A stretch of 63,963 nucleotides of DNA, filler included, from Octopus bimaculoides (lineage: Eukaryota): assembly GCF_001194135.2 (NCBI RefSeq). It is 10 parts of 8 records of this genome, joined end to end, with 100 filler letters (N's around TTAATTAATTAA, not from the genome) between each part and the next. Parts side by side here need not be neighbours in the genome. Positions count along the whole stretch, not along the records: positions 54,498 to 62,810 come from NC_068981.1; 9 more parts are not named here. One strand, written 5' to 3'. Both the position numbers and the translations under genes were made by a program. Below, one piece after another: positions 54,591 to 62,810 of the stretch; position 1 is the stretch's first letter, and each line of letters begins with the position of its first letter. The notes under the pieces are model-generated. The model did no database searches. It worked only from the letters and a program-made list of their open reading frames with translations, and was not told where the DNA came from.

Positions 54591-56055
54591 ATATAAGAGA
54601 GGGGCAAGGTGGGTATGGGAGGAGGGAGAAAGCGAGGAGAGAGAAAGAGAAGAAGAGAGAGAGAGAGTAAGAGAGAAGAGAGAAAGAGTAGGGGTGAATA
54701 AAAGTATTATTATTAGTGTAAAATCCTGATTCTGTATCTATTTAGCGTCCAAAGCACACAATTCTACAATATCTTGCTTAAAAACGCTAGAGATCTACAG
54801 AAGATGTGAATGTGTTGAGAAAAGCCCACCTGAGTATTTTTCCATTTGAGATGCAAGAGAAACTTTACATCACAGCAAGAAAGACAAATATGAGTGACTA
54901 TATCCAATTTATTCATTAAGCAAAACCGACAAATGAAATAAGGGTACAATTAACACTGATAGCCCCAGGATAGTCACACTCAATGATTGGAACAAGTAAA
55001 AGAGTGAAAGTGGATGTATGTGTATGTGTGTGTGTGTTATATGTCAAATTACATTACATGCAATGAGGGTCAAGGTTGAATTTGTGCCTAATCTCCAATG
55101 TTAAGTGCTGGAATGTGATACCTGCCTAAACGAAGATAGGCTGTGAGCAATGTTTCAATCATGCTGATATAATATGTGAAATAGAACAAAAGGATAGACA
55201 CGTATCAAGTCAGTTTATAACATATTTATACTTAGAAATGATATATTGAAGAGAAGTACAACTATACATAAAATAAAAATGTATTGCAACAAGTCAAAGA
55301 AATCTGGAAAGTAAAAAGTTTGTCAAAGTTCAGATGTAGATAGTTACATTCCAGGATATGATAGAAAGGAAGTTCATAGTGTTGATGAGACAAAGTTTGC
55401 TAACTCGATCAATAGTGCTACAGATAAAAATTTTGGAATTAACAGAAAAAAGAGGTGTGCAGGTAGTTCTTTACATCTGTTTCTGGAATAGTCGCATGTT
55501 TGATGCATATATCTGCATGTTACCTACACTACCAAAATCTAGTGATAACTTATTCCATCGTCAGAAGAATAATGGTTAGAAAAAGGTTAGAAAAAAAGAG
55601 AGGCTGATATATCAAGGGTCTAAACTTAAATTTGCCTTTTATCTTTCTGTGGTCAGTTGGTTAATAAAATAATGAGCCAATCAAGCACTAAGGTCAAATT
55701 AATCGATCGTATTATCCTAAAACTGTGTAACCATGTGCCAATTTAAAAAATCAATAATTGATTTTGTTTTGATATTGATTATTTCAAAAGTCCAAGAAAA
55801 TTATTCACAAAGTCTTTATATATATTTTTTGTTTCCTTTACGTTCAAGTTGCCATCGTTGCTGCTGCTGCTGCTGTTGTTGTTGTTGTTGTTGTTGTTCT
55901 GGTTACTGTTGTTTTTGTTATTGCTGTTTGGCCCAAGGTCATCAAACAAAACCGAGACTGCTAAAGATGATGACTTTAACGATGATGCTGGTGCTAACGA
56001 TGATGCTGATAGCAACGACGACGATGATGATGACAATGACAATGATGATGATGAC

Positions 56056-56088
<33 letters not shown>

Positions 56089-56465
56089 GGTGGATTTGGT
56101 GGTGGTGGTGGTGCTGCTGCTGATGGTGGTGGTTGTGGTGGTAGTGGTGNNNNNNNNNNNNNNNNNNNNNNNNNNNNNNNNNNNNNNNNNNNNNNNNNNN
56201 CATTTTATAATCAATTATTGAAAAGTACCCAAATCTTAAACAGCAACAACATCTTCAGCAACAAGTAAACGTGTTATTCACAAATAAAATATTAAAAATT
56301 CTTCTATTTCTCTGTTTTTCTATATTTTTCAGTCTATAATTTAATATTTTCCAATATTTTATTTCAAGTGAACAGGAAAATAAGAAGTATTTTAGCACAA
56401 AATTTTATTAAAGAAACACCACTTCAAATTTTTTTCCAAATACAGATGCATGTATGTGTGTGTGC

Positions 56466-56500
<35 letters not shown>

Positions 56501-56719
56501 TGTGTCTGTGTGTGTATGTGTGTGTTTATACGTGTATGGTTGTAAATATATTTCAAGTACATCTCATGCATTTTGAAAAATGTTTGTGTTCATATATGTA
56601 TGTGTGTGTGCATATGCGTGTGTATGCATATGTGTGAGTGTGTATAAAAGTGTCTATGTATATATATATATATGCATGTATATAAGTATATATATATATG
56701 TACATGTATATATATATAA

Positions 56720-56819
<100 letters not shown>

Positions 56820-57466
56820 CTGTGTGTGTGTGTGTGTATGTAAGTAGATATATACACACACATACACACGCACACACACATTTATAAAAGTATGTATATT
56901 GATTGAATTTATATAGACTTCCCTGCCATAAGCTTTTTCGACCATTAGCTCTGTACATCAGCAGTCACAAACTAATTTGCTTCAGGGTCATATTTTTTAC
57001 AGTTAGAATTTTATGTCTGTATCCAAGTGTGCTAATCTTTGATTTGCGTATTGTTTGCATGTTCAGTTTGGCATTGTATTCTAATATGAATGGCTCCCAT
57101 AATTAATCTTCTATTTCTTGTGGGGAATTTTAATAAAACATGTAAATTTTCACCTTTAATATTTCTCAAAAATTCTTTAGTGGTGTTTGATATAAAGTTT
57201 TGCAATAGATCCTTCTTCTAAATGTTTGATAATTCCCCAACAGAGTGTTCTACTAGTATATCCAATGTAATAGTTAGAGTCCTGAAGTTTGCAACTTTCA
57301 AATTTATAATTTAGGCACAGGCGTGGTTGTGTGGTAAGATGATTGCCTTATCACCACATAATTCCAGATTCAGTCCCACTGCATGACATTTTGTCTTCTG
57401 CTATAGCTTTGGGCTGACCAAAGACTTGTGAGTGGATTTGGTTGATGGGAACTGAAAGAAGATCAT

Positions 57467-57959
57467 TGTCTCCCTTGTTAGTCATTAGAAAAATGCTCTC
57501 ACATGGCTAAGAGGTGTTTGACTCTTATTTCTAACAATACCAGTGCTGACTAGCACCCTCCGCCACTTTAGTGACGGCTAAGCTTATTGCCTTTTGGTTG
57601 TAAATTGCAAATAGCCATCTTAATAATTTATAATTCTCACTTCACCATTTTCGGAACCAATTAATGTTTCCTATGGTGTTCTCTATAAGACTGACAAGGT
57701 GTGTTATTTAACCCTTGGCATCAGAGTAATGAGTCACTGATGAAGAGTAATCAACTCTGAAATCAGTGCTGATATGATTCCACCTAGCTTGCCATAGGGA
57801 GTGTGTGTCCCTTGTTAATCCTTAGGAAAGGCTCTCATGTGGCTAAGAGTTGTTTTGCCTCTTATTTCTAACAATGTTGGTACTGACTAGCACCTTCCAT
57901 CGCTTTAGTGACTTTACTTGTTGCCCTTCGGTTGTAAATTGCGAATAGTCACCTGAATA

Positions 57960-57965
<6 letters not shown>
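57467..57965 (+). mobile_element. Partial tandem repeat A-B-A' (period ~335 bp) carrying a hammerhead; PLE pLTR / non-LTR retrozyme-like
   Basis: 57471-57632 aligns with 57808-57965 (clearly diverged); ends in (TA)n; inserted at the internal microsatellite position of a family A SINE. Confidence 0.72.
57731..57780 (+). ncRNA. Type I hammerhead ribozyme, complete canonical core
   Basis: Stem I GAGTCA/TGATTC (6 bp, one G-U); CTGATGA; stem II AGAGT-AATCA-ACTCT; GAAA; stem III (A)TCAG-TG-CTGA(T); triplet AUA; predicted cleavage after 57774. Confidence 0.85.
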
Positions 57966-58001
<36 letters not shown>

Positions 58002-58254
58002 TGGTAAAGTTCAGAGAGTAACTACCTTTGTTTGTTAGTAACAAAGCGCCTTACCCTCAGAATGAAAAGCAGATTGCATGATACCTGTGTATGAACAACT
58101 ATGCTACACACACACACACACACACATATATATNNNNNNNNNNNNNNNNNNNNNNNNNNNNNNNNNNNNNNNNNNNNNNNNNNNNNNNNNNNNNNNNNNA
58201 GGTGTATAAACAAGCAACATGTGTATTAGTTTGATACCCAGGAAGATGAGAAAG

Positions 58255-58512: not shown

Positions 58513-61023
58513 TAGGGTAATGACTTTTTAAACTTTTACTAATATTGAACATGACCAGGGCGACTTGCTATGATAAATGATGAGAAAACAGTGACTAGCG
58601 ATTCATTTTCTTTTTTAAACTTTCAAAAACCTCCCCCACCAACTAATATTTCTATTTTCGAATGTGTCACACTTGCATTGCCTTAGTCAAACTCACATCA
58701 CGTTTGGAATTAGTGCTTCACACAATTTTTATTAGATTTAAAGGAGTTTATGACAGAAGTTACTTTCTGGCCAAATGCCAAGAACGATATATACAGTTGT
58801 AAAAGTTGTGTCACATCTTGAGTAGTATTATTTGTCGTTGAGACAATGCATGAATGCATTATTCTTTCTATTACAGATATTAAAATATACTGCTTTAATC
58901 AGTGAAATAAAAGCATCAATCATGTCACTTAAGCAGTCGAGTCAAGCAGTTGCAGCAAACGGAAAAAAGTGGTAAAAAATATGACTAACTTTGAAAAGTC
59001 TGTTAAAAAGCGAAGAATAATACCGAATGTGGAACGTTAATTGGCTGAACTAACTAGAATCCCCAGAAAATCCAAAATCATTGGAAGGTATAACGCATTA
59101 GCAAAAGTTAAAAAATCCAGACATGCAAGAAATCAACTCATTGCTCAAGAACTAGAGAATCTATGGGAAAAAATTGATTTTCCGTGTATAACATTACAGT
59201 CTATTGTAAAAAAAAGTAAATGCTTTGCTGACAGGGTACGAAACCCATTTGAAATGTCTGAAACCAGATCAAAATTTTGAAGATTTGTTTGGACACTACT
59301 AATCAACATGGCAGCTGGTTATCTAAAGAAGACAAAGACTTTTACAGTACACAAATTCAAAGTGGCGGTATAACTGGCTACACCACGTCTCGGTTAGCTA
59401 TGGTTCATCCTTCAAAGCGAACACCTTCCTTGTCAAGACTGTCAGTTTCAACTTCCCAAGCGTTTCTCCCATATGCTGAAGCAGGTAAAGTAGCGTGATT
59501 AAAAAATTCTCAAATATTACATAATTTTTTTTGTATGCATTGATGTCACTCACTAATATGTACGCAACTTCTTGCAGATACATCGTCATCATCATGAGAA
59601 ACCTCCTACTTCTGATTCTGCAGATGAAATCACATTACCAATAGATGAACAAGTTGGCACCTCTAAACAACATCACTCAACTAAGGAGGCAATGAACTTG
59701 TTGAAAAAAATAGAATTTAAGCAGTCATAAAGCAGCTAATGTCTGCAAACAGCTGAGAGAGGAAGGAGTACTTCTTCCCACTCTATCACAGCCAGGGGTG
59801 TACAAAGCTGCTATGAGAGAGGCTGCAAAGATGAAGCAGGAGCTAAACGAAACTTTAAAAAGATGACCAGTGGGTGCTCCATTTTCGATGGAAAGATTAT
59901 GAAGGGTAAAGAAAGAGAAGTTGTGAAAAACAACACAAGAGAAGTAAAATTAGCAGGACTAACTCTGAAGAATGGCAGAGCAGATACCATTTTTCAAGGA
60001 CTAAAAGAAGTTTTGGATGATTACGAATTGTGTCCAGCAATCAAAATGATCATCAGAGACACATGTAGTGTAAATACAGGAAAGCATACTGGAGTGGCCA
60101 TTCAACTGCAGAACGAATTTGTAAAGCGTGGATATCCTACACCTCAATACATCGGTTGCCAATATCATGTGTTAGACTGCCTCCTAAAACATGTGATGGG
60201 TGATACATGAAAGGAAAACTGCATCATCAAATATATCATATCCGTTCATAGACGATTTAATAAAGTCTATGAAGATTTGGTGGCAGAATGGAAATAATGC
60301 AAAGCAAAACTTGAAATGAATGATAATCCAAGTTGAAAGGATGATCTTAAGTTTTTATTTGAACTTGGTCATGCTTTCCGATTTTATCAGCAACAAACCA
60401 TTTTCAAAGAAATCGAGTTTAGAAAACTTCCTAGACTTAGCAATGCACGTTGGAATTCACGAGCAATCTTGGTCACCTTCACATACAGGCTTCTACCACA
60501 AAGTAGAGAAAAACTCTACGACGTGTGTTGTTTTATCAGCGGAAACTGGATGGAAATGTGGTTTTGTGACCAAAGCTTTGACAGCATGGCCTATCAGAAA
60601 CTTTCAGAAGTAGCTTATGGATATACTTAAAGCAAGAGAATGTTTGAAAGTTAATTGGAATCTTGAAGAATCAGTAATTCAAGATGTTCGGCGTTCAAAC
60701 ATGTGCTGAACGTGCAGTAAAAATAATGGAGGAGTTAGATTGCAAGTCTTCTGAAAAATTAAATCTGTGATTTGTTTTAACCAACAAGGGTCTTTGAAAA
60801 CTGCTGTTGTATTAGGCTGCACTTATTACATTAACAATGCATAAGAGTACGTCTTATTACTTGAACAATATATGCATGTCTGTAGTAAAAGTGTTGTCGA
60901 ATATATTGCCATCGGTGGGGGTGGGGTGTCAAAGAAAGAAATGATTGATTTTTTCGTCATTATACCATAAAGTTCACCTTCAAGTACCTTGGCCCTACTC
61001 AACTTGAAAAAATCATCACCCTA
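58513..61023 (+). mobile_element. Full-length degenerate hAT-superfamily (hATm-like) DNA transposon, ~2.5 kb
   Basis: TIRs TAGGGTAATGACTTTTTAAACTT vs TAGGGTGATGATTTTTTCAAGTT (19/23); flanks ATATACAC (58505-58512) and ATACTCAC (61024-61031) match 6/8, consistent with an 8-bp TSD. Confidence 0.85.
59040..60790 (+). pseudogene. hATm-like transposase, multiply frameshifted, probable intron 59485-59577
   Basis: Fragments FDGK, DTCSVNTG (DTTxxNTG-like), CQYHVLD (CxxH), KLPRLSNARWNSRAI, SNMCAERAVKIMEE. Confidence 0.8.
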
Positions 61024-61070: not shown

Positions 61071-61105
<35 letters not shown>

Positions 61106-62593
61106 GTACATTTTTGTGCCTGTATTTGTCCCCCATTGCTTCTCGACAACCGGTGTTGGTGTGTTTACATCCCTGTAACTTAGTGGTTCGGCAAAAGAGA
61201 NNNNNNNNNNNNNNNNNNNNNNNNNNNNNNNNNNNNNNNNNNNNNNNNNNNNNNNNNNNNNNNNNNNNNNNNNNNNNNNNNNNNNNNNNNNNNNNNNNNN
61301 NNNNNNNNNNNNNNNNNNNNNNNNNNNNNNNNNNNNNNNNNNNNNNNNNNNNNNNNNNNNNNNNNNNNNNNNNNNNNNNNNNNNNNNNNNNNNNNNNNNN
61401 NNNNNNNNNNNNNNNNNNNNNNNNNNNNNNNNNNNNNNNNNNNNNNNNNNNNNNNNNNNNNNNNNNNNNNNNNNNNNNNNNNNNNNNNNNNNNNNNNNNN
61501 NNNNNNNNNNNNNNNNNNNNNNNNNNNNNNNNNNNNNNNNNNNNNNNNNNNNNNNNNNNNNNNNNNNNNNNNNNNNNNNNNNNNNNNNNNNNNNNNNNNN
61601 NNNNNNNNNNNNNNNNNNNNNNNNNNNNNNNNNNNNNNNNNNNNNNNNNNNNNNNNNNNNNNNNNNNNNNNNNNNNNNNNNNNNNNNNNNNNNNNNNNNN
61701 NNNNNNNNNNNNNNNNNNNNNNNNNNNNNNNNNNNNNNNNNNNNNNNNNNNNNNNNNNNNNNNNNNNNNNNNNNNNNNNNNNNNNNNNNNNNNNNNNNNN
61801 NNNNNNNNNNNNNNNNNNNNNNNNNNNNNNNNNNNNNNNNNNNNNNNNNNNNNNNNNNNNNNNNNNNNNNNNNNNNNNNNNNNNNNNNNNNNNNNNNNNN
61901 NNNNNNNNNNNNNNNNNNNNNNNNNNNNNNNNNNNNNNNNNNNNNNNNNTATATATATATATATATATGCCACTAAAGTGAACAAGAACACTAAAATTGC
62001 GAATTAGCCACCCATATTATTTATATATATCGTTGCTATTATGCAAAAGTGTCGTAAGGCCAAAACGTTGCTTTTTCAGAAAACGAAAGTATAGTTTCAC
62101 CATTCTATAGTAAAACCGTTGTACTACACTTACGACAATTTTTGATATCTTGGCATCTGAAGCAGCTGGAGATACGATAGTTTGACCAAAAGAATCGGCT
62201 ATTGCAATCAAAAATAAATATTGAAAAAAAAACGCATTTGACCAAATTTGGAATACGACAGTTTAACATAATACCAACGATATATATACATATATATATG
62301 ATGTGTTGTGAATTTATGGAAAGAAATCCCATAAAACTCAACAATTCAGTTAGAAATGGAGAAGAGAAGATGTTAAAATGTATAAGAGAATTTTAATTCA
62401 TGCAGACGACCGTTTCGTACAGAGATATAAAATTTACGCCTGTAATCTACCAGCAGAATATGAAGAATCAATATTAGAAATCTTTTTTGTGAAACCTCCA
62501 AATTAAAGGACGAATCTAAATTCAACCTTTTTAGGCCTATATACATATATACATACGCTATATACATACATACATACATACATACATACATAC

Positions 62594-62810
62594 ATCATCA
62601 TCATCATCATCATCGTTTAACGTCCGCTTTCCATGCTAGCATGGGTTGGACGATTTGACTGAGGACTGGTGAAACCGGATGGCAACACCAGGCTCCAGTC
62701 TGATTTGGCAGAGTTTCTACAGCTGGATGCCCTTCCTAACGCCAACCACTCAGAGAGTGTAGTGGGTGCTTTTACGTGTCACCCGCACGAAAACGGCCAC
62801 GCTCGAAATG
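62594..62810 (-). mobile_element. SINE family C young copy truncated at linker
   Basis: Near-identical to 806-1046. Confidence 0.85.

What the first reader, a model, noticed from the sequence alone, without database searches (positions are those of the whole stretch)
57467..57965. Complete type I hammerhead ribozyme with a self-complementary stem III inside a ~335-bp partial tandem repeat (retrozyme / Penelope pLTR-like)
Seen in sequence: all canonical core bases (CUGAUGA, GAAA, AUA triplet) and fully paired stems I and II at 57731-57780. Stem III (AUCAGUGCUGAU) has only a 2-nt loop as a monomer but pairs end-to-end with a second copy of itself (10 Watson-Crick + 2 G-U pairs). The motif lies between two diverged direct repeats (57471-57632 and 57808-57965), and the unit ends in (TA)n. 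Established: minimal type I hammerheads with palindromic stem III that cleave as dimers occur in Penelope-like element pLTRs and in 150-400-nt tandem non-LTR retrozymes of animals, which produce small circular RNAs. Inference: this is a cephalopod member of that class, possibly not yet described.
Basis: partly seen in the sequence, partly recalled or inferred. Interest (0 to 1): 0.85.

Follow-up and report, generated by a model that had tools for sequence, protein, structure and literature searches.

The report
Hammerhead ribozyme repeat in octopus DNA
A complete self-cutting "hammerhead" RNA motif sits inside a one-and-a-half-copy, ~335-bp repeat in octopus DNA; it is most likely an old, dead copy of a known class of small ribozyme-carrying mobile elements (retrozymes), so it is a new example of a known kind.

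Summary
At 57731-57780 (+) there is a type I hammerhead with every core base, a 6-bp helix I, a 5-bp helix II and a near-palindromic helix III. It lies between two ~83%-identical direct repeats (57467-57632 and 57804-57966, period 334-337) that end in (TA)18.

A covariance model built only from four published retrozyme hammerheads (coral, mussel, two axolotl) picks this site as its only good hit in the piece (19.5 bits, E about 3e-4). Chance expectation is about 1e-4 to 6e-4 per window. Rfam's own hammerhead models do not detect it.

The host is an octopus, because the flanking repeats match Octopus vulgaris and O. bimaculoides. The element starts exactly where an octopus SINE's internal (TA/TG)n normally lies and ends in (TA)n, the preferred target of Penelope-like elements.

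Best reading: an old, 5'-truncated 1.5-unit insertion of a non-autonomous retrozyme. It has only one ribozyme, so this locus cannot make a circle.

The motif resembles canonical invertebrate retrozyme ribozymes more than minimal Penelope-type ones, so obligate dimer cleavage is not required. No other copies could be retrieved, so family conservation and covariation remain untested.

Verdict: new member of a known kind, of moderate to low interest.

The parts
57313..57468 (+). Flank: 5' 'head' of a tRNA-derived octopus SINE. It is complete at its 5' end and cut off exactly where the SINE's internal (TA/TG)n microsatellite normally starts.
   Evidence: There are 8 copies at 70-78% identity in 40 kb of Octopus vulgaris. 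ARAGORN finds no intact tRNA.
57467..57632 (+). Segment A, copy 1: the 3' part of a 5'-truncated first unit.
   Evidence: Direct repeat with 57804-57966, 82.7% identity, 21 transitions and 7 transversions.
57633..57803 (+). Segment B: the single-copy part of the unit, which carries the ribozyme.
   Evidence: It lies between the two A copies. A plus B gives a 334-337-bp unit.
57712..57720 (+). 5' strand of the closing stem (CCCUUGGCA) beyond internal loop 1.
   Evidence: Pairs with 57790-57799 in the RNAfold MFE of 57700-57810.
57731..57780 (+). Type I hammerhead ribozyme. Helix I: 57731-36 with 57775-80. Core CUGAUGA: 57737-43. Helix II: 57744-48 with 57754-58, loop 57749-53. GAAA: 57759-62. 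Helix III strand: 57762-73. A17: 57774. Predicted cleavage is between 57774 and 57775.
   Evidence: Read. Only descriptor hit in the piece. Top, full-length hit of model R1, which was built from published retrozyme ribozymes: 19.5 bits, E about 3e-4.
57735..57768 (+). Competing hairpin: CACUGAU (57735-41) pairs with AUCAGUG (57762-68) and sequesters the catalytic core.
   Evidence: MFE is -16.2 kcal/mol against -7.6 for the hammerhead fold. A comparable gap is computed for the experimentally active mussel ribozyme.
57790..57799 (+). 3' strand of the closing stem (UGCCAUAGGG).
57804..57966 (+). Segment A, copy 2: the end of the complete unit.
57963..57999 (.). (TA)18 microsatellite at the 3' end of the element. 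It is either the target or a tail.
   Evidence: TRF finds 18.5 copies at 100%. (TA)n is the preferred target of Naiad and Neptune-type Penelope-like elements.

Best explanation
This is an old, 5'-truncated, ~1.5-unit insertion (A-B-A') of a small non-coding, ribozyme-carrying retroelement of the animal 'non-LTR retrozyme' kind. These elements are now argued to be non-autonomous dependants of Penelope-like elements. The host is an octopus genome.

**Inferred life cycle, by analogy with coral, mussel and axolotl retrozymes**
1. Tandem copies are transcribed.
2. The type I hammerhead in each ~335-nt unit cuts after A17.
3. [quoted passage not shown]
4. A Penelope-like reverse transcriptase/endonuclease copies the circle or multimer by target-primed reverse transcription at a (TA)n site. 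This gives more-than-unit-length, 5'-truncated tandem cDNA.

**What is shown**
- The intact ribozyme motif.
- The partial tandem architecture.
- The low GC content.
- The (TA)n end.
- The start of the element at a SINE's microsatellite position.
- The octopus origin.

**What is inferred**
- Self-cleavage.
- Circular RNA.
- The mobilising enzyme.
- The existence of a family.

This particular locus has one ribozyme only, so at most it cuts its own transcript once. It is best seen as a dead 'offspring' copy. The ribozyme could act as a single motif. The near-palindromic helix III also allows a double hammerhead between neighbouring units, and the core-sequestering hairpin may hold monomers uncleaved.
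For: - **Motif.** It is complete and is the only descriptor hit in the piece. Chance expectation is 7e-5 to 6e-4 per window.
- **Independent model.** A covariance model built solely from four published retrozyme hammerheads gives 57731-57780 as a full-length top hit (19.5 bits, E about 3e-4). The next hit scores 10.5 bits.
- **Shared details.** All four published ribozymes share ...CA|CUGAnGA and cut|UG, a 6-bp helix I and a palindromic helix III. The coral has CAGUACUG where this motif has CAGUGCUG.
- **Unit properties.** The unit is 334-337 bp at 39.5% GC in a partial tandem. This falls within the published 150-450 bp, <45-50% GC and 'dimers to multimers'. Mussel units are 350-390 bp.
- **Insertion site.** The element begins exactly at the position of the SINE's internal (TA/TG)n and ends in (TA)18. 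Penelope-like elements prefer (TA)n targets, occur in Octopus spp., and make tandem insertions.
- **Published models.** Retrozymes are proposed to be copied from circular RNA into tandem cDNA. Monomer derivatives are common.
- **Dimer energetics.** The double-hammerhead energy (-30.2) is close to two inactive monomers (-32.4), whereas the single hammerhead lies 8.6 kcal/mol above the MFE.
- **Other octopus DNA.** A second, unrelated hammerhead-like relic turned up in only 40 kb of O. vulgaris DNA. This suggests that such motifs are not rare in octopus genomes.
Against: - There is only one locus and one ribozyme.
- Rfam hammerhead models do not hit.
- The 10.1-11.1 pair is A-U, whereas G-C is described as highly conserved.
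- No loop 1-loop 2 tertiary motif could be recognised.
- The predicted MFE is an inactive hairpin. The same is true for the active mussel and coral ribozymes.
- The two A copies differ by K2P 0.20. If they were identical at insertion, a 43-45-nt constrained motif should stay untouched only about 1% of the time, or a few percent allowing wobble. So either the copies differed from the start, or the motif was noticed because it survived, or it is under selection.
- No convincing target-site duplication was found.
- The SINE tail is missing downstream.
Confidence: 0.62

Rival explanations
1. The locus is a remnant of an autonomous Penelope-like element: a pseudo-LTR or terminal fragment left after 5' truncation or internal deletion. 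On this reading it is not a separate non-autonomous retrozyme family.
For: Penelope-like elements carry type I hammerheads in their terminal repeats, insert as partial tandems and favour (TA)n. Frog retrozymes are sequence relatives of pseudo-LTRs. Cephalopods carry several Penelope-like lineages.
Against: - No reverse transcriptase or GIY-YIG reading frame lies between or near the repeats. Only 171 bp separate the A copies. No stop-free stretch of 40 or more residues in the piece looks like RT or GIY-YIG by eye; only the transposon-like reading frames at 59041-60627 and their homologues were scanned against Pfam, without any RT or GIY-YIG match.
- Published Penelope-type hammerheads are minimal: no or tiny helix III, long helix II with a bulge after position 9, and G10.1-C11.1. 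This motif has none of these traits.
- Naiads, the lineage noted for (TA)n targeting, lack hammerheads.
Confidence: 0.15
2. The motif is hammerhead-like by chance and sits inside an unrelated local tandem duplication. There is no ribozyme function and no mobile family.
For: - A 2.5-Gb genome is expected to hold about 3-24 chance motifs of this quality.
- Rfam does not recognise it.
- The core overlaps a plain 7+5-bp hairpin that is the predicted MFE.
- There is no second copy of the unit.
Against: - Per-window expectation is only 7e-5 to 6e-4.
- Starting from the hairpin, a further 5-nt helix III strand, H17 and a 6-bp helix I are still needed.
- The helix I base CA/UG and the palindromic helix III match published retrozyme ribozymes.
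- It coincides with a 335-bp tandem unit and a (TA)n end.
Confidence: 0.08
3. The locus is a composite SINE of the schistosome Sm-alpha / Sj-alpha type. On this reading the tRNA-derived head at 57313-57468 and the hammerhead-bearing body are one element, transcribed by RNA polymerase III.
For: - The SINE head is complete at its 5' end, has the same orientation and abuts the element directly.
- Sm-alpha and Sj-alpha are tRNA-derived SINE-like elements of ~335 bp that carry hammerheads.
Against: - The head is not part of the repeated unit, because A' is preceded by B and not by a head.
- In O. vulgaris copies that continue past the head, the head is followed by a short microsatellite and the standard tail, never by A or B.
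- T4 runs at 57592-95 and 57648-51 would stop polymerase III before the ribozyme.
- This SINE is so dense (8 heads in 40 kb) that adjacency is expected by chance.
- Insertion into the SINE's microsatellite, or template switching of the reverse transcriptase onto a SINE RNA, explains the junction.
Confidence: 0.05

Closest known systems
Metazoan non-LTR retrozymes (Cervera & de la Pena 2020, PMC7229834): coral Amil224, mussel Mg353, axolotl Ax330 and Ax353
   Same: - A type I hammerhead with a 6-bp helix I that begins ...CA|CUGAnGA and resumes |UG after the cut.
- A short helix II.
- A palindromic helix III.
- A unit of a few hundred bp (mussel 350-390 bp) with low GC.
- A tandem arrangement with no coding capacity.
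- A model built from these four ribozymes recognises the octopus motif.
   Different: - There are only 1.47 units and one ribozyme here.
- The 10.1-11.1 pair is A-U (Ax353 has U-U; the others have G-C).
- Helix III is longer (4-5 bp).
- H17 is A, as in Ax353.
- There is no sequence similarity outside the ribozyme.
- Expression, circles and copy number are unknown.
- A cephalopod host is not covered in the papers I could search.
Minimal hammerheads in pseudo-LTRs of Penelope-like elements (Cervera & de la Pena 2014, PMC4209133)
   Same: A type I hammerhead in a partial tandem retroelement insertion. Helix III is palindromic, allowing a double hammerhead. The insertion is associated with a microsatellite.
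   Different: Those motifs lack helix III or have a tiny one, carry an extra base after A9, have a long helix II and a conserved G10.1-C11.1, and flank an RT/GIY-YIG reading frame. None of these features applies here.
Newt satellite 2 and axolotl HHR_Amex1 'double hammerheads' (Forster et al. 1988, as cited)
   Same: A ~330-bp tandem unit with a weak monomer helix III and a palindromic loop. Two copies can form one extended helix III and cleave in trans.
   Different: The newt and axolotl helix III is 1-2 bp. Here it is 4-5 bp, comparable to or longer than invertebrate ribozymes that cleave as monomers.
Schistosome Sm-alpha / Sj-alpha SINE-like elements with hammerheads
   Same: A ~335-bp hammerhead-bearing repeat lying next to a tRNA-derived SINE sequence.
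   Different: In schistosomes the tRNA-like part belongs to the unit. Here it is a separate, very abundant octopus SINE whose normal tail is replaced.
Plant LTR retrozymes and viroid-like circular RNAs
   Same: Ribozyme-processed circular RNA intermediates. The ribozyme can be blocked by a competing pairing.
   Different: Those carry type III hammerheads, LTRs, PBS and PPT, have >55% GC, and use Gypsy machinery.

Membership tests
Hammerhead ribozyme, type I | Conserved core CUGANGA ... GAAA ... with A15.1-U16.1 and H17 (not G). | tested here: met
   CUGAUGA, GAAA, A15.1-U16.1, A17. The GAAAY and RUH filters are also met.
Hammerhead ribozyme, type I | Three helices around the core, with helix I open (the 5' and 3' ends leave through helix I). 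| tested here: met
   Helix I is 6 bp, helix II is 5 bp plus a 5-nt loop, and helix III is 4 bp plus a tetraloop (or 5 bp plus 2 nt). Helix I continues through an internal loop into a 9-bp closing stem.
Hammerhead ribozyme, type I | Recognised by the curated Rfam hammerhead covariance models. | tested here: not met
   No hammerhead family is listed at E<=10, either on 8.3 kb or on 131 nt.
Hammerhead ribozyme, type I | G10.1-C11.1 pair at the base of helix II (highly conserved, not absolute). | tested here: not met
   The pair is A-U here. The axolotl Ax353 retrozyme ribozyme has U-U at the same place and still cleaves as a dimer.
Hammerhead ribozyme, type I | Self-cleavage at the predicted site. 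| not testable with these tools
   This needs in vitro transcription. Thermodynamics alone is uninformative: the active mussel ribozyme has a hammerhead-versus-MFE gap of 7.4 kcal/mol against 8.6 here.
Hammerhead ribozyme, type I | Loop 1-loop 2 tertiary contacts. | tested here: inconclusive
   An internal loop (10 and 9 nt) and a 5-nt loop 2 exist, but I could not match them to a defined motif. Mussel retrozyme ribozymes also lack most of these nucleotides.
Metazoan non-LTR retrozyme | The hammerhead lies within a short tandem repeat of 150-450 bp. | tested here: met
   The period is 334-337 bp and 1.47 units are present.
Metazoan non-LTR retrozyme | At least two ribozymes flank a unit, so that a unit-length RNA or circle can be released. 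| tested here: not met
   There is only one hammerhead on either strand of the piece. The first unit is truncated upstream of where its ribozyme would lie.
Metazoan non-LTR retrozyme | Low GC (<45-50%), no LTR, PBS or PPT, and no coding capacity. | tested here: met
   GC is 39.5%. The longest stop-free stretch within the unit is 37 codons.
Metazoan non-LTR retrozyme | A multi-copy, dispersed family in the host genome with a conserved ribozyme. | not testable with these tools
   No octopus genome collection is at hand. There is no copy in 40 kb of O. vulgaris. The apparent third copy is chance: 617 of 1000 shuffles score as well.
Metazoan non-LTR retrozyme | Expressed as ~170-400-nt linear and circular RNA. 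| not testable with these tools
   No RNA data are available.
Metazoan non-LTR retrozyme | The ribozyme resembles those of known retrozymes. | tested here: met
   Model R1, built from coral, mussel and axolotl sequences only, scores it at 19.5 bits, E about 3e-4, full length.
Penelope-like element (pseudo-LTR with minimal hammerhead) | An RT plus GIY-YIG reading frame lies between the repeats. | tested here: not met
   Only 171 bp separate the repeats. No RT/EN-like frame is apparent by eye in the piece's stop-free stretches; the Pfam scans covered only the reading frames at 59041-60627 and their homologues and gave no RT or GIY-YIG match.
Penelope-like element (pseudo-LTR with minimal hammerhead) | Minimal hammerhead: helix III absent or tiny, an extra base after A9, a long helix II. 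| tested here: not met
   One search compared with the description.
Penelope-like element (pseudo-LTR with minimal hammerhead) | Insertion at microsatellites, as partial tandems. | tested here: met
   The element starts at the SINE's (TA/TG)n position and ends in (TA)18. This feature fits a Penelope-dependent non-autonomous element equally well.

The most novel reading that the evidence does not exclude
The motif may belong to a live, cephalopod-specific retrozyme lineage, or be an exapted single copy, whose hammerhead is kept intact by selection.
- The ribozyme shows no disabling change although the flanking repeat copies have diverged by K2P 0.20.
- A built-in switch may exist. A 7-bp pairing of the catalytic core with the 5' half of helix III would keep monomers or circles uncut, while the 12-nt near-palindrome would let neighbouring units form a double hammerhead.
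- If so, octopus tissues would contain abundant ~335-nt ribozyme-derived circular RNAs that nobody has catalogued.
Probability: 0.15. Interest if true: 0.55.

Novelty: new member of a known kind. Interest (0 to 1): 0.35.

Why it matters
Retrozymes are a recently recognised route to abundant small circular RNAs in animals. Their link to Penelope-like elements is still being worked out.

A cephalopod family would extend the known host range within molluscs from bivalves to a lineage with unusual RNA biology. It would also give a concrete ~335-nt sequence to look for in octopus RNA-seq data.

The junction with a SINE microsatellite and the (TA)n end give a small piece of evidence for Penelope-type (TA)n-targeted integration of such elements. 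The case also shows that Rfam's hammerhead models miss motifs that a tiny model built from published retrozyme ribozymes finds.

By itself, one decayed locus changes little.

Tried and rejected
1. **Rfam cmscan.** Run on the piece and on 131 nt around the motif. No hammerhead family was listed. The listed hits (C/D-box snoRNAs, mir-297 and others) are low-scoring or microsatellite artefacts.
2. **Pattern scans.** I scanned viral, metagenome and prokaryote genome collections for the ribozyme and for conserved parts of the repeat. Nothing turned up except two chance matches inside bacterial coding DNA, L001 and L002.
3. **Six-frame 'chimeric' protein query of the unit.** The aim was to fish repeat-derived reading frames out of the 5.8-billion-protein collection. 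There were no hits.
4. **Look-ups of window reading frames and of O. bimaculoides proteins.** None were on record. Only two O. vulgaris loci (40 kb) could be fetched, and they hold no copy of the unit.
5. **Apparent third, 5'-truncated copy at 61969-62035.** It had blastn E = 0.012 and looked plausible in the alignment. I rejected it because 617 of 1000 dinucleotide shuffles of the element score as well once the TA run is removed.
6. **Homology with the O. vulgaris relic.** I tested the unit against the element around the hammerhead-like relic in L005. It is not significant (p = 0.1; the MAFFT alignment is out of register).
7. **The competing hairpin as proof of inactivity.** I rejected this because the same calculation puts the experimentally active mussel and coral ribozymes off their MFE too.
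8. **Structure-pair counting.** I planned it on a MAFFT alignment of six hammerheads and abandoned it because the 3' halves were misaligned.
9. **A target-site duplication.** AATTTATA occurs at 57301-08 and 57959-66, but it is not adjacent to the SINE start and lies in AT-rich DNA. I did not accept it.
Full report
**What is in the sequence.**
Reading 57300-58200 confirms the motif at 57731-57780 on the + strand: GAGUCA-CUGAUGA-AGAGU(AAUCA)ACUCU-GAAA-UCAGUGCUGAU-A/UGAUUC. In standard numbering:
- Helix I is 6 bp (one G-U).
- C3-A9 read CUGAUGA.
- Helix II is 5 bp with a 5-nt loop.
- G12-A14 and the A15.1-U16.1 pair are present, and position 17 is A.
- The predicted cut is after 57774.
- The sequence passes the filter that the retrozyme authors used (CUGANGA / GAAAY / RUH).

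There are two deviations from the textbook motif.
- The 10.1-11.1 pair is A-U instead of the usual G-C.
- Helix III can be drawn either as 5 bp with an impossible 2-nt loop or as 4 bp with a GUGC tetraloop.

The 12-nt helix III strand pairs with a second copy of itself over its whole length (10 Watson-Crick + 2 G-U, -15.0 kcal/mol). As an isolated hairpin it is not stable (0.0 kcal/mol).

Beyond helix I, an internal loop (10 and 9 nt) leads into a closing stem, CCCUUGGCA/UGCCAUAGGG (57712-20 / 57790-99).

**Is it more than chance?**
A descriptor scan (helix I >=5 bp, II >=4, III >=3, exact core) finds this one site and nothing else on either strand of the 8.3-kb piece. In 1.875 Gb of random sequence with the piece's base composition, the descriptor hit 9 times, and once at the observed quality.
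- That is about 6e-4 and about 7e-5 expected per 62.9-kb window on both strands.
- It is also about 24 and about 3 per 2.5-Gb genome (the genome size is my own knowledge).
- So a lone motif of this quality is not proof on a whole-genome scale, but it is very unlikely in one random window.

Rfam 15 lists no hammerhead family here, even at E<=10 on a 131-nt slice.

As an independent test I took four retrozyme ribozymes with mapped cleavage sites from Supplementary Table 2 of Cervera & de la Pena 2020 (coral Amil224, mussel Mg353, axolotl Ax353 and Ax330). I aligned them and built a covariance model with the hammerhead structure. Searched without filters over the piece, the model's top hit is exactly 57731-57780 (+): full length, 19.5 bits, E about 3e-4 (calibration is rough). 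The runner-up scores 10.5 bits and is a truncated non-match.

All four published ribozymes share with this one:
- the helix I base ...CA|CUGAnGA and ...H|UG;
- a 6-bp helix I;
- a palindromic helix III. The coral has CAGUACUG where the octopus motif has CAGUGCUG.

**The repeat.**
Segment A occurs twice, at 57467-57632 and 57804-57966. The copies are 82.7% identical over 162 aligned positions, with 21 transitions, 7 transversions and K2P 0.20.
- The 171-bp segment B between them carries the ribozyme.
- The unit A+B is 334-337 bp at 39.5% GC.
- The locus is therefore A-B-A', or 1.47 units, followed by (TA)18 at 57963-57999.
- The internal A-to-B junction reads AATAATTTATA|ATTCTC, and the right end reads AATAATTTATA|(TA)n.
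- There is only one hammerhead, because the first unit is truncated downstream of where its ribozyme would be.

**Host and surroundings.**
Translations of the flanking repeats hit proteins of Octopus vulgaris and O. bimaculoides (64-96% identity). In 40 kb of O. vulgaris chromosome sequence fetched through two of those proteins (L004, L005):
- the repeat at 57313-57461 has 8 copies;
- the one at 61102-61200 has 7 copies;
- the one at 62539-62790 has 6 copies.

The piece is therefore octopus DNA.

Alignment with complete O. vulgaris copies shows that 57313-57468 is the 5' 'head' of a SINE. After ...GAAACTGAAAGAAGCCCGTCGT, this SINE normally continues with a short (TA/TG)n and then a ~100-bp tail.
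- In the window the head is complete at its 5' end.
- Segment A begins exactly where the microsatellite should start.
- The tail does not follow the (TA)18.

Craig et al. 2021 report that Penelope-like elements insert as partial tandems with a strong bias for microsatellites. They report (TA)n for Naiads and a zinc-finger linker proposed to do the same in Neptune, and they find that Octopus spp. carry several Penelope-like lineages.

Two readings fit the junction, and I cannot tell them apart:
- insertion into the SINE's microsatellite, with later loss of the tail;
- a reverse transcriptase that switched template from the element RNA to a SINE RNA.

**Folding.**
RNAfold does not predict the hammerhead as the ground state of the 50-mer.
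- CACUGAU (57735-41, covering the core) pairs with AUCAGUG (57762-68, the 5' half of helix III). This gives -16.2 kcal/mol against -7.6 for the hammerhead fold.
- I do not read this as evidence of inactivity. The same calculation puts the coral ribozyme (kobs about 0.8/min) 3.6 kcal/mol and the mussel ribozyme (about 0.1/min) 7.4 kcal/mol above their MFEs.
- A double hammerhead between two copies scores -30.2. That is close to two inactive monomers (-32.4) and to the cofold MFE (-34.8). The dimeric form is therefore relatively much more competitive than the monomeric one.
- The full unit folds with z = -1.9 on the + strand and z = -3.2 on the - strand.

**What it most likely is.**
The combination points to an animal non-LTR retrozyme:
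- a canonical-style type I hammerhead that a retrozyme-trained model recognises;
- a ~335-bp, low-GC, non-coding unit in partial tandem;
- a microsatellite-associated, 5'-truncated insertion.

The published life cycle runs as follows: tandem transcription, ribozyme cleavage, circularisation by a tRNA ligase, reverse transcription of the circle into tandem cDNA, and integration by an autonomous element, probably Penelope-like. [quoted passage not shown] A 1.47-unit insertion is what rolling reverse transcription of a circle or multimer with 5' truncation would leave.

This locus, with one ribozyme, cannot itself produce a circle. Self-cleavage, circular RNA, the mobilising enzyme and the very existence of a family are inferred, not shown.

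The motif is not a 'minimal' Penelope-type hammerhead. Those lack helix III, carry an extra base after A9 and have a long helix II. Its helix III is longer than that of the coral ribozyme, which cleaves well as a single motif. Invertebrate retrozyme ribozymes are generally efficient monomers (abstract). Dimer cleavage is therefore allowed by the near-palindrome but not required.

**An unexplained point.**
If the two A copies were identical at insertion, each has taken about 10% substitutions. A 43-45-nt constrained motif would then stay untouched only about 1% of the time, or a few percent if wobble changes are allowed. Three explanations are possible, and I cannot decide between them:
- The copies were already different in the template. 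Retrozyme RNA populations are heterogeneous.
- Ascertainment: the motif was flagged because it survived.
- Selection on the ribozyme.

The central UG of helix III and U11.1 both sit where a CpG would be in a perfect AUCAGCGCUGAU palindrome and in the canonical C11.1-G12. Both may therefore be CpG-decay products (inference only).

**Rivals.**
- *Fragment of an autonomous Penelope-like element (0.15).* It has the same integration signature. However, there is no reading frame and the ribozyme style is wrong.
- *Chance motif in an unrelated duplication (0.08).* This is possible genome-wide but unlikely per window. It does not explain the shared helix I base, the palindrome and the tandem context.
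- *Sm-alpha-like composite SINE (0.05).* Schistosome tRNA-derived SINE-like elements of ~335 bp carry hammerheads. Here, however, the head is outside the repeated unit. O. vulgaris copies that extend past the head continue into the standard tail. T4 runs at 57592-95 and 57648-51 would stop polymerase III before the ribozyme.

**What could not be done.**
No collection at hand holds enough cephalopod DNA. Pattern scans and a six-frame protein trick found no relatives. The 40 kb of O. vulgaris holds no copy of the unit. An apparent third copy at 61969-62035 is no better than shuffled controls.

**Literature and novelty.**
I found no paper describing retrozymes or hammerhead repeats in cephalopods. 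The giant squid genome paper lists 235 Rfam Hammerhead_1 hits without further comment. Mussels are the described mollusc case. This is a new member of a known kind. Interest is modest (0.35) unless the family proves abundant, expressed or under selection.

Noticed in passing
L005 10622-10668 (+) = Octopus vulgaris OX597840.1, about 21,100,061-21,100,107, minus strand of the record: A second hammerhead-like motif, unrelated in sequence: CCACUA-CUGAAGU-GAUC(CAAGAA)GAUC-GAAA-UUACAUGAU-C/UGGUGG. Model R1 scores it at 19.6 bits, E about 0.002 in 62 kb. It has a 6-bp helix I, a 4-bp helix II and a near-palindromic helix III, but U instead of the invariant A9. It is enclosed by an 11-bp closing stem (fold z = -3.6) and flanked by (TA/TG)n and (CA)n. 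It is probably a decayed ribozyme relic, which suggests such motifs are not rare in octopus genomes.
   Followed up: partly
window 59041-60627 (+): A frameshifted, stop-interrupted reading frame of a transposon-like protein of about 500 codons; it contains ...SNARWNSR..., which to my eye resembles hAT transposases. The homologues found (P0001-P0017, 37-46% identity) come from Logan, ENA and JGI assemblies, including a 2.4-Mb eukaryotic contig in ERZ25067590. Neither the window reading frames nor the five homologues scanned (P0001, P0002, P0003, P0009, P0010) match any Pfam family above the curated cut-off.
   Followed up: partly
window 57313-57468 (+) and 61102-61200 (+): The head and (separately) the tail of a very abundant tRNA-derived octopus SINE. 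There are 8 heads and 7 tails in 40 kb of O. vulgaris at 70-86% identity. Complete copies have an internal (TA/TG)n between head and tail.
   Followed up: yes
window 62539-62790: Another abundant octopus repeat, with 6 copies in 40 kb of O. vulgaris at 76-92% identity. Its long open frames are annotated as 'hypothetical predicted protein' or fused to real domains in O. vulgaris and O. bimaculoides protein sets (P0018-P0026). Part of those annotations is therefore repeat-derived.
   Followed up: partly
window 57541-57549 and 57763-57771: The 9-mer CAGTGCTGA of helix III also occurs in segment A copy 1. In the unit's MFE the helix III strand pairs over 13 bp with the diverged counterpart in copy 2 (57875-57887). 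One exact 9-mer in 500 nt is about what chance gives, so I did not pursue it.
   Followed up: no
window 57560-57577: A small hairpin, CCGCCAC-UUUA-GUGACGG, in segment A copy 1. It is hit at 10.5 bits by the hammerhead model on the minus strand and is not a ribozyme. Copy 2 has lost it (CCATCGC...GTGA---C).
   Followed up: no
window 56416-56890: Compound (TG)n/(TA)n/(CA)n microsatellites produce all the 'best' Rfam E-values in the piece (mir-297, mir-466, mir-3688 and others). These are low-complexity artefacts far below the gathering scores.
   Followed up: no
window 55844-56150: A long run of trinucleotide repeats, (TGC)n, (TGT)n, (GAT)n and (TGG)n, giving long spurious open frames on both strands. 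It is cut by an assembly gap.
   Followed up: no
window 56150-56200, 58134-58199, 61201-61949: Three runs of N (51, 66 and 749 bases) are assembly gaps inside the piece. The second lies 134 bp downstream of the element's (TA)18, so the missing SINE tail could in principle be hidden there.
   Followed up: no
window 57301-57308 and 57959-57966: AATTTATA occurs just upstream of the SINE head and at the 3' end of the element. It is a possible 8-bp duplication or microhomology for a chimeric SINE-head-plus-element insertion. However, it is not adjacent to the SINE start and lies in AT-rich DNA.
   Followed up: no
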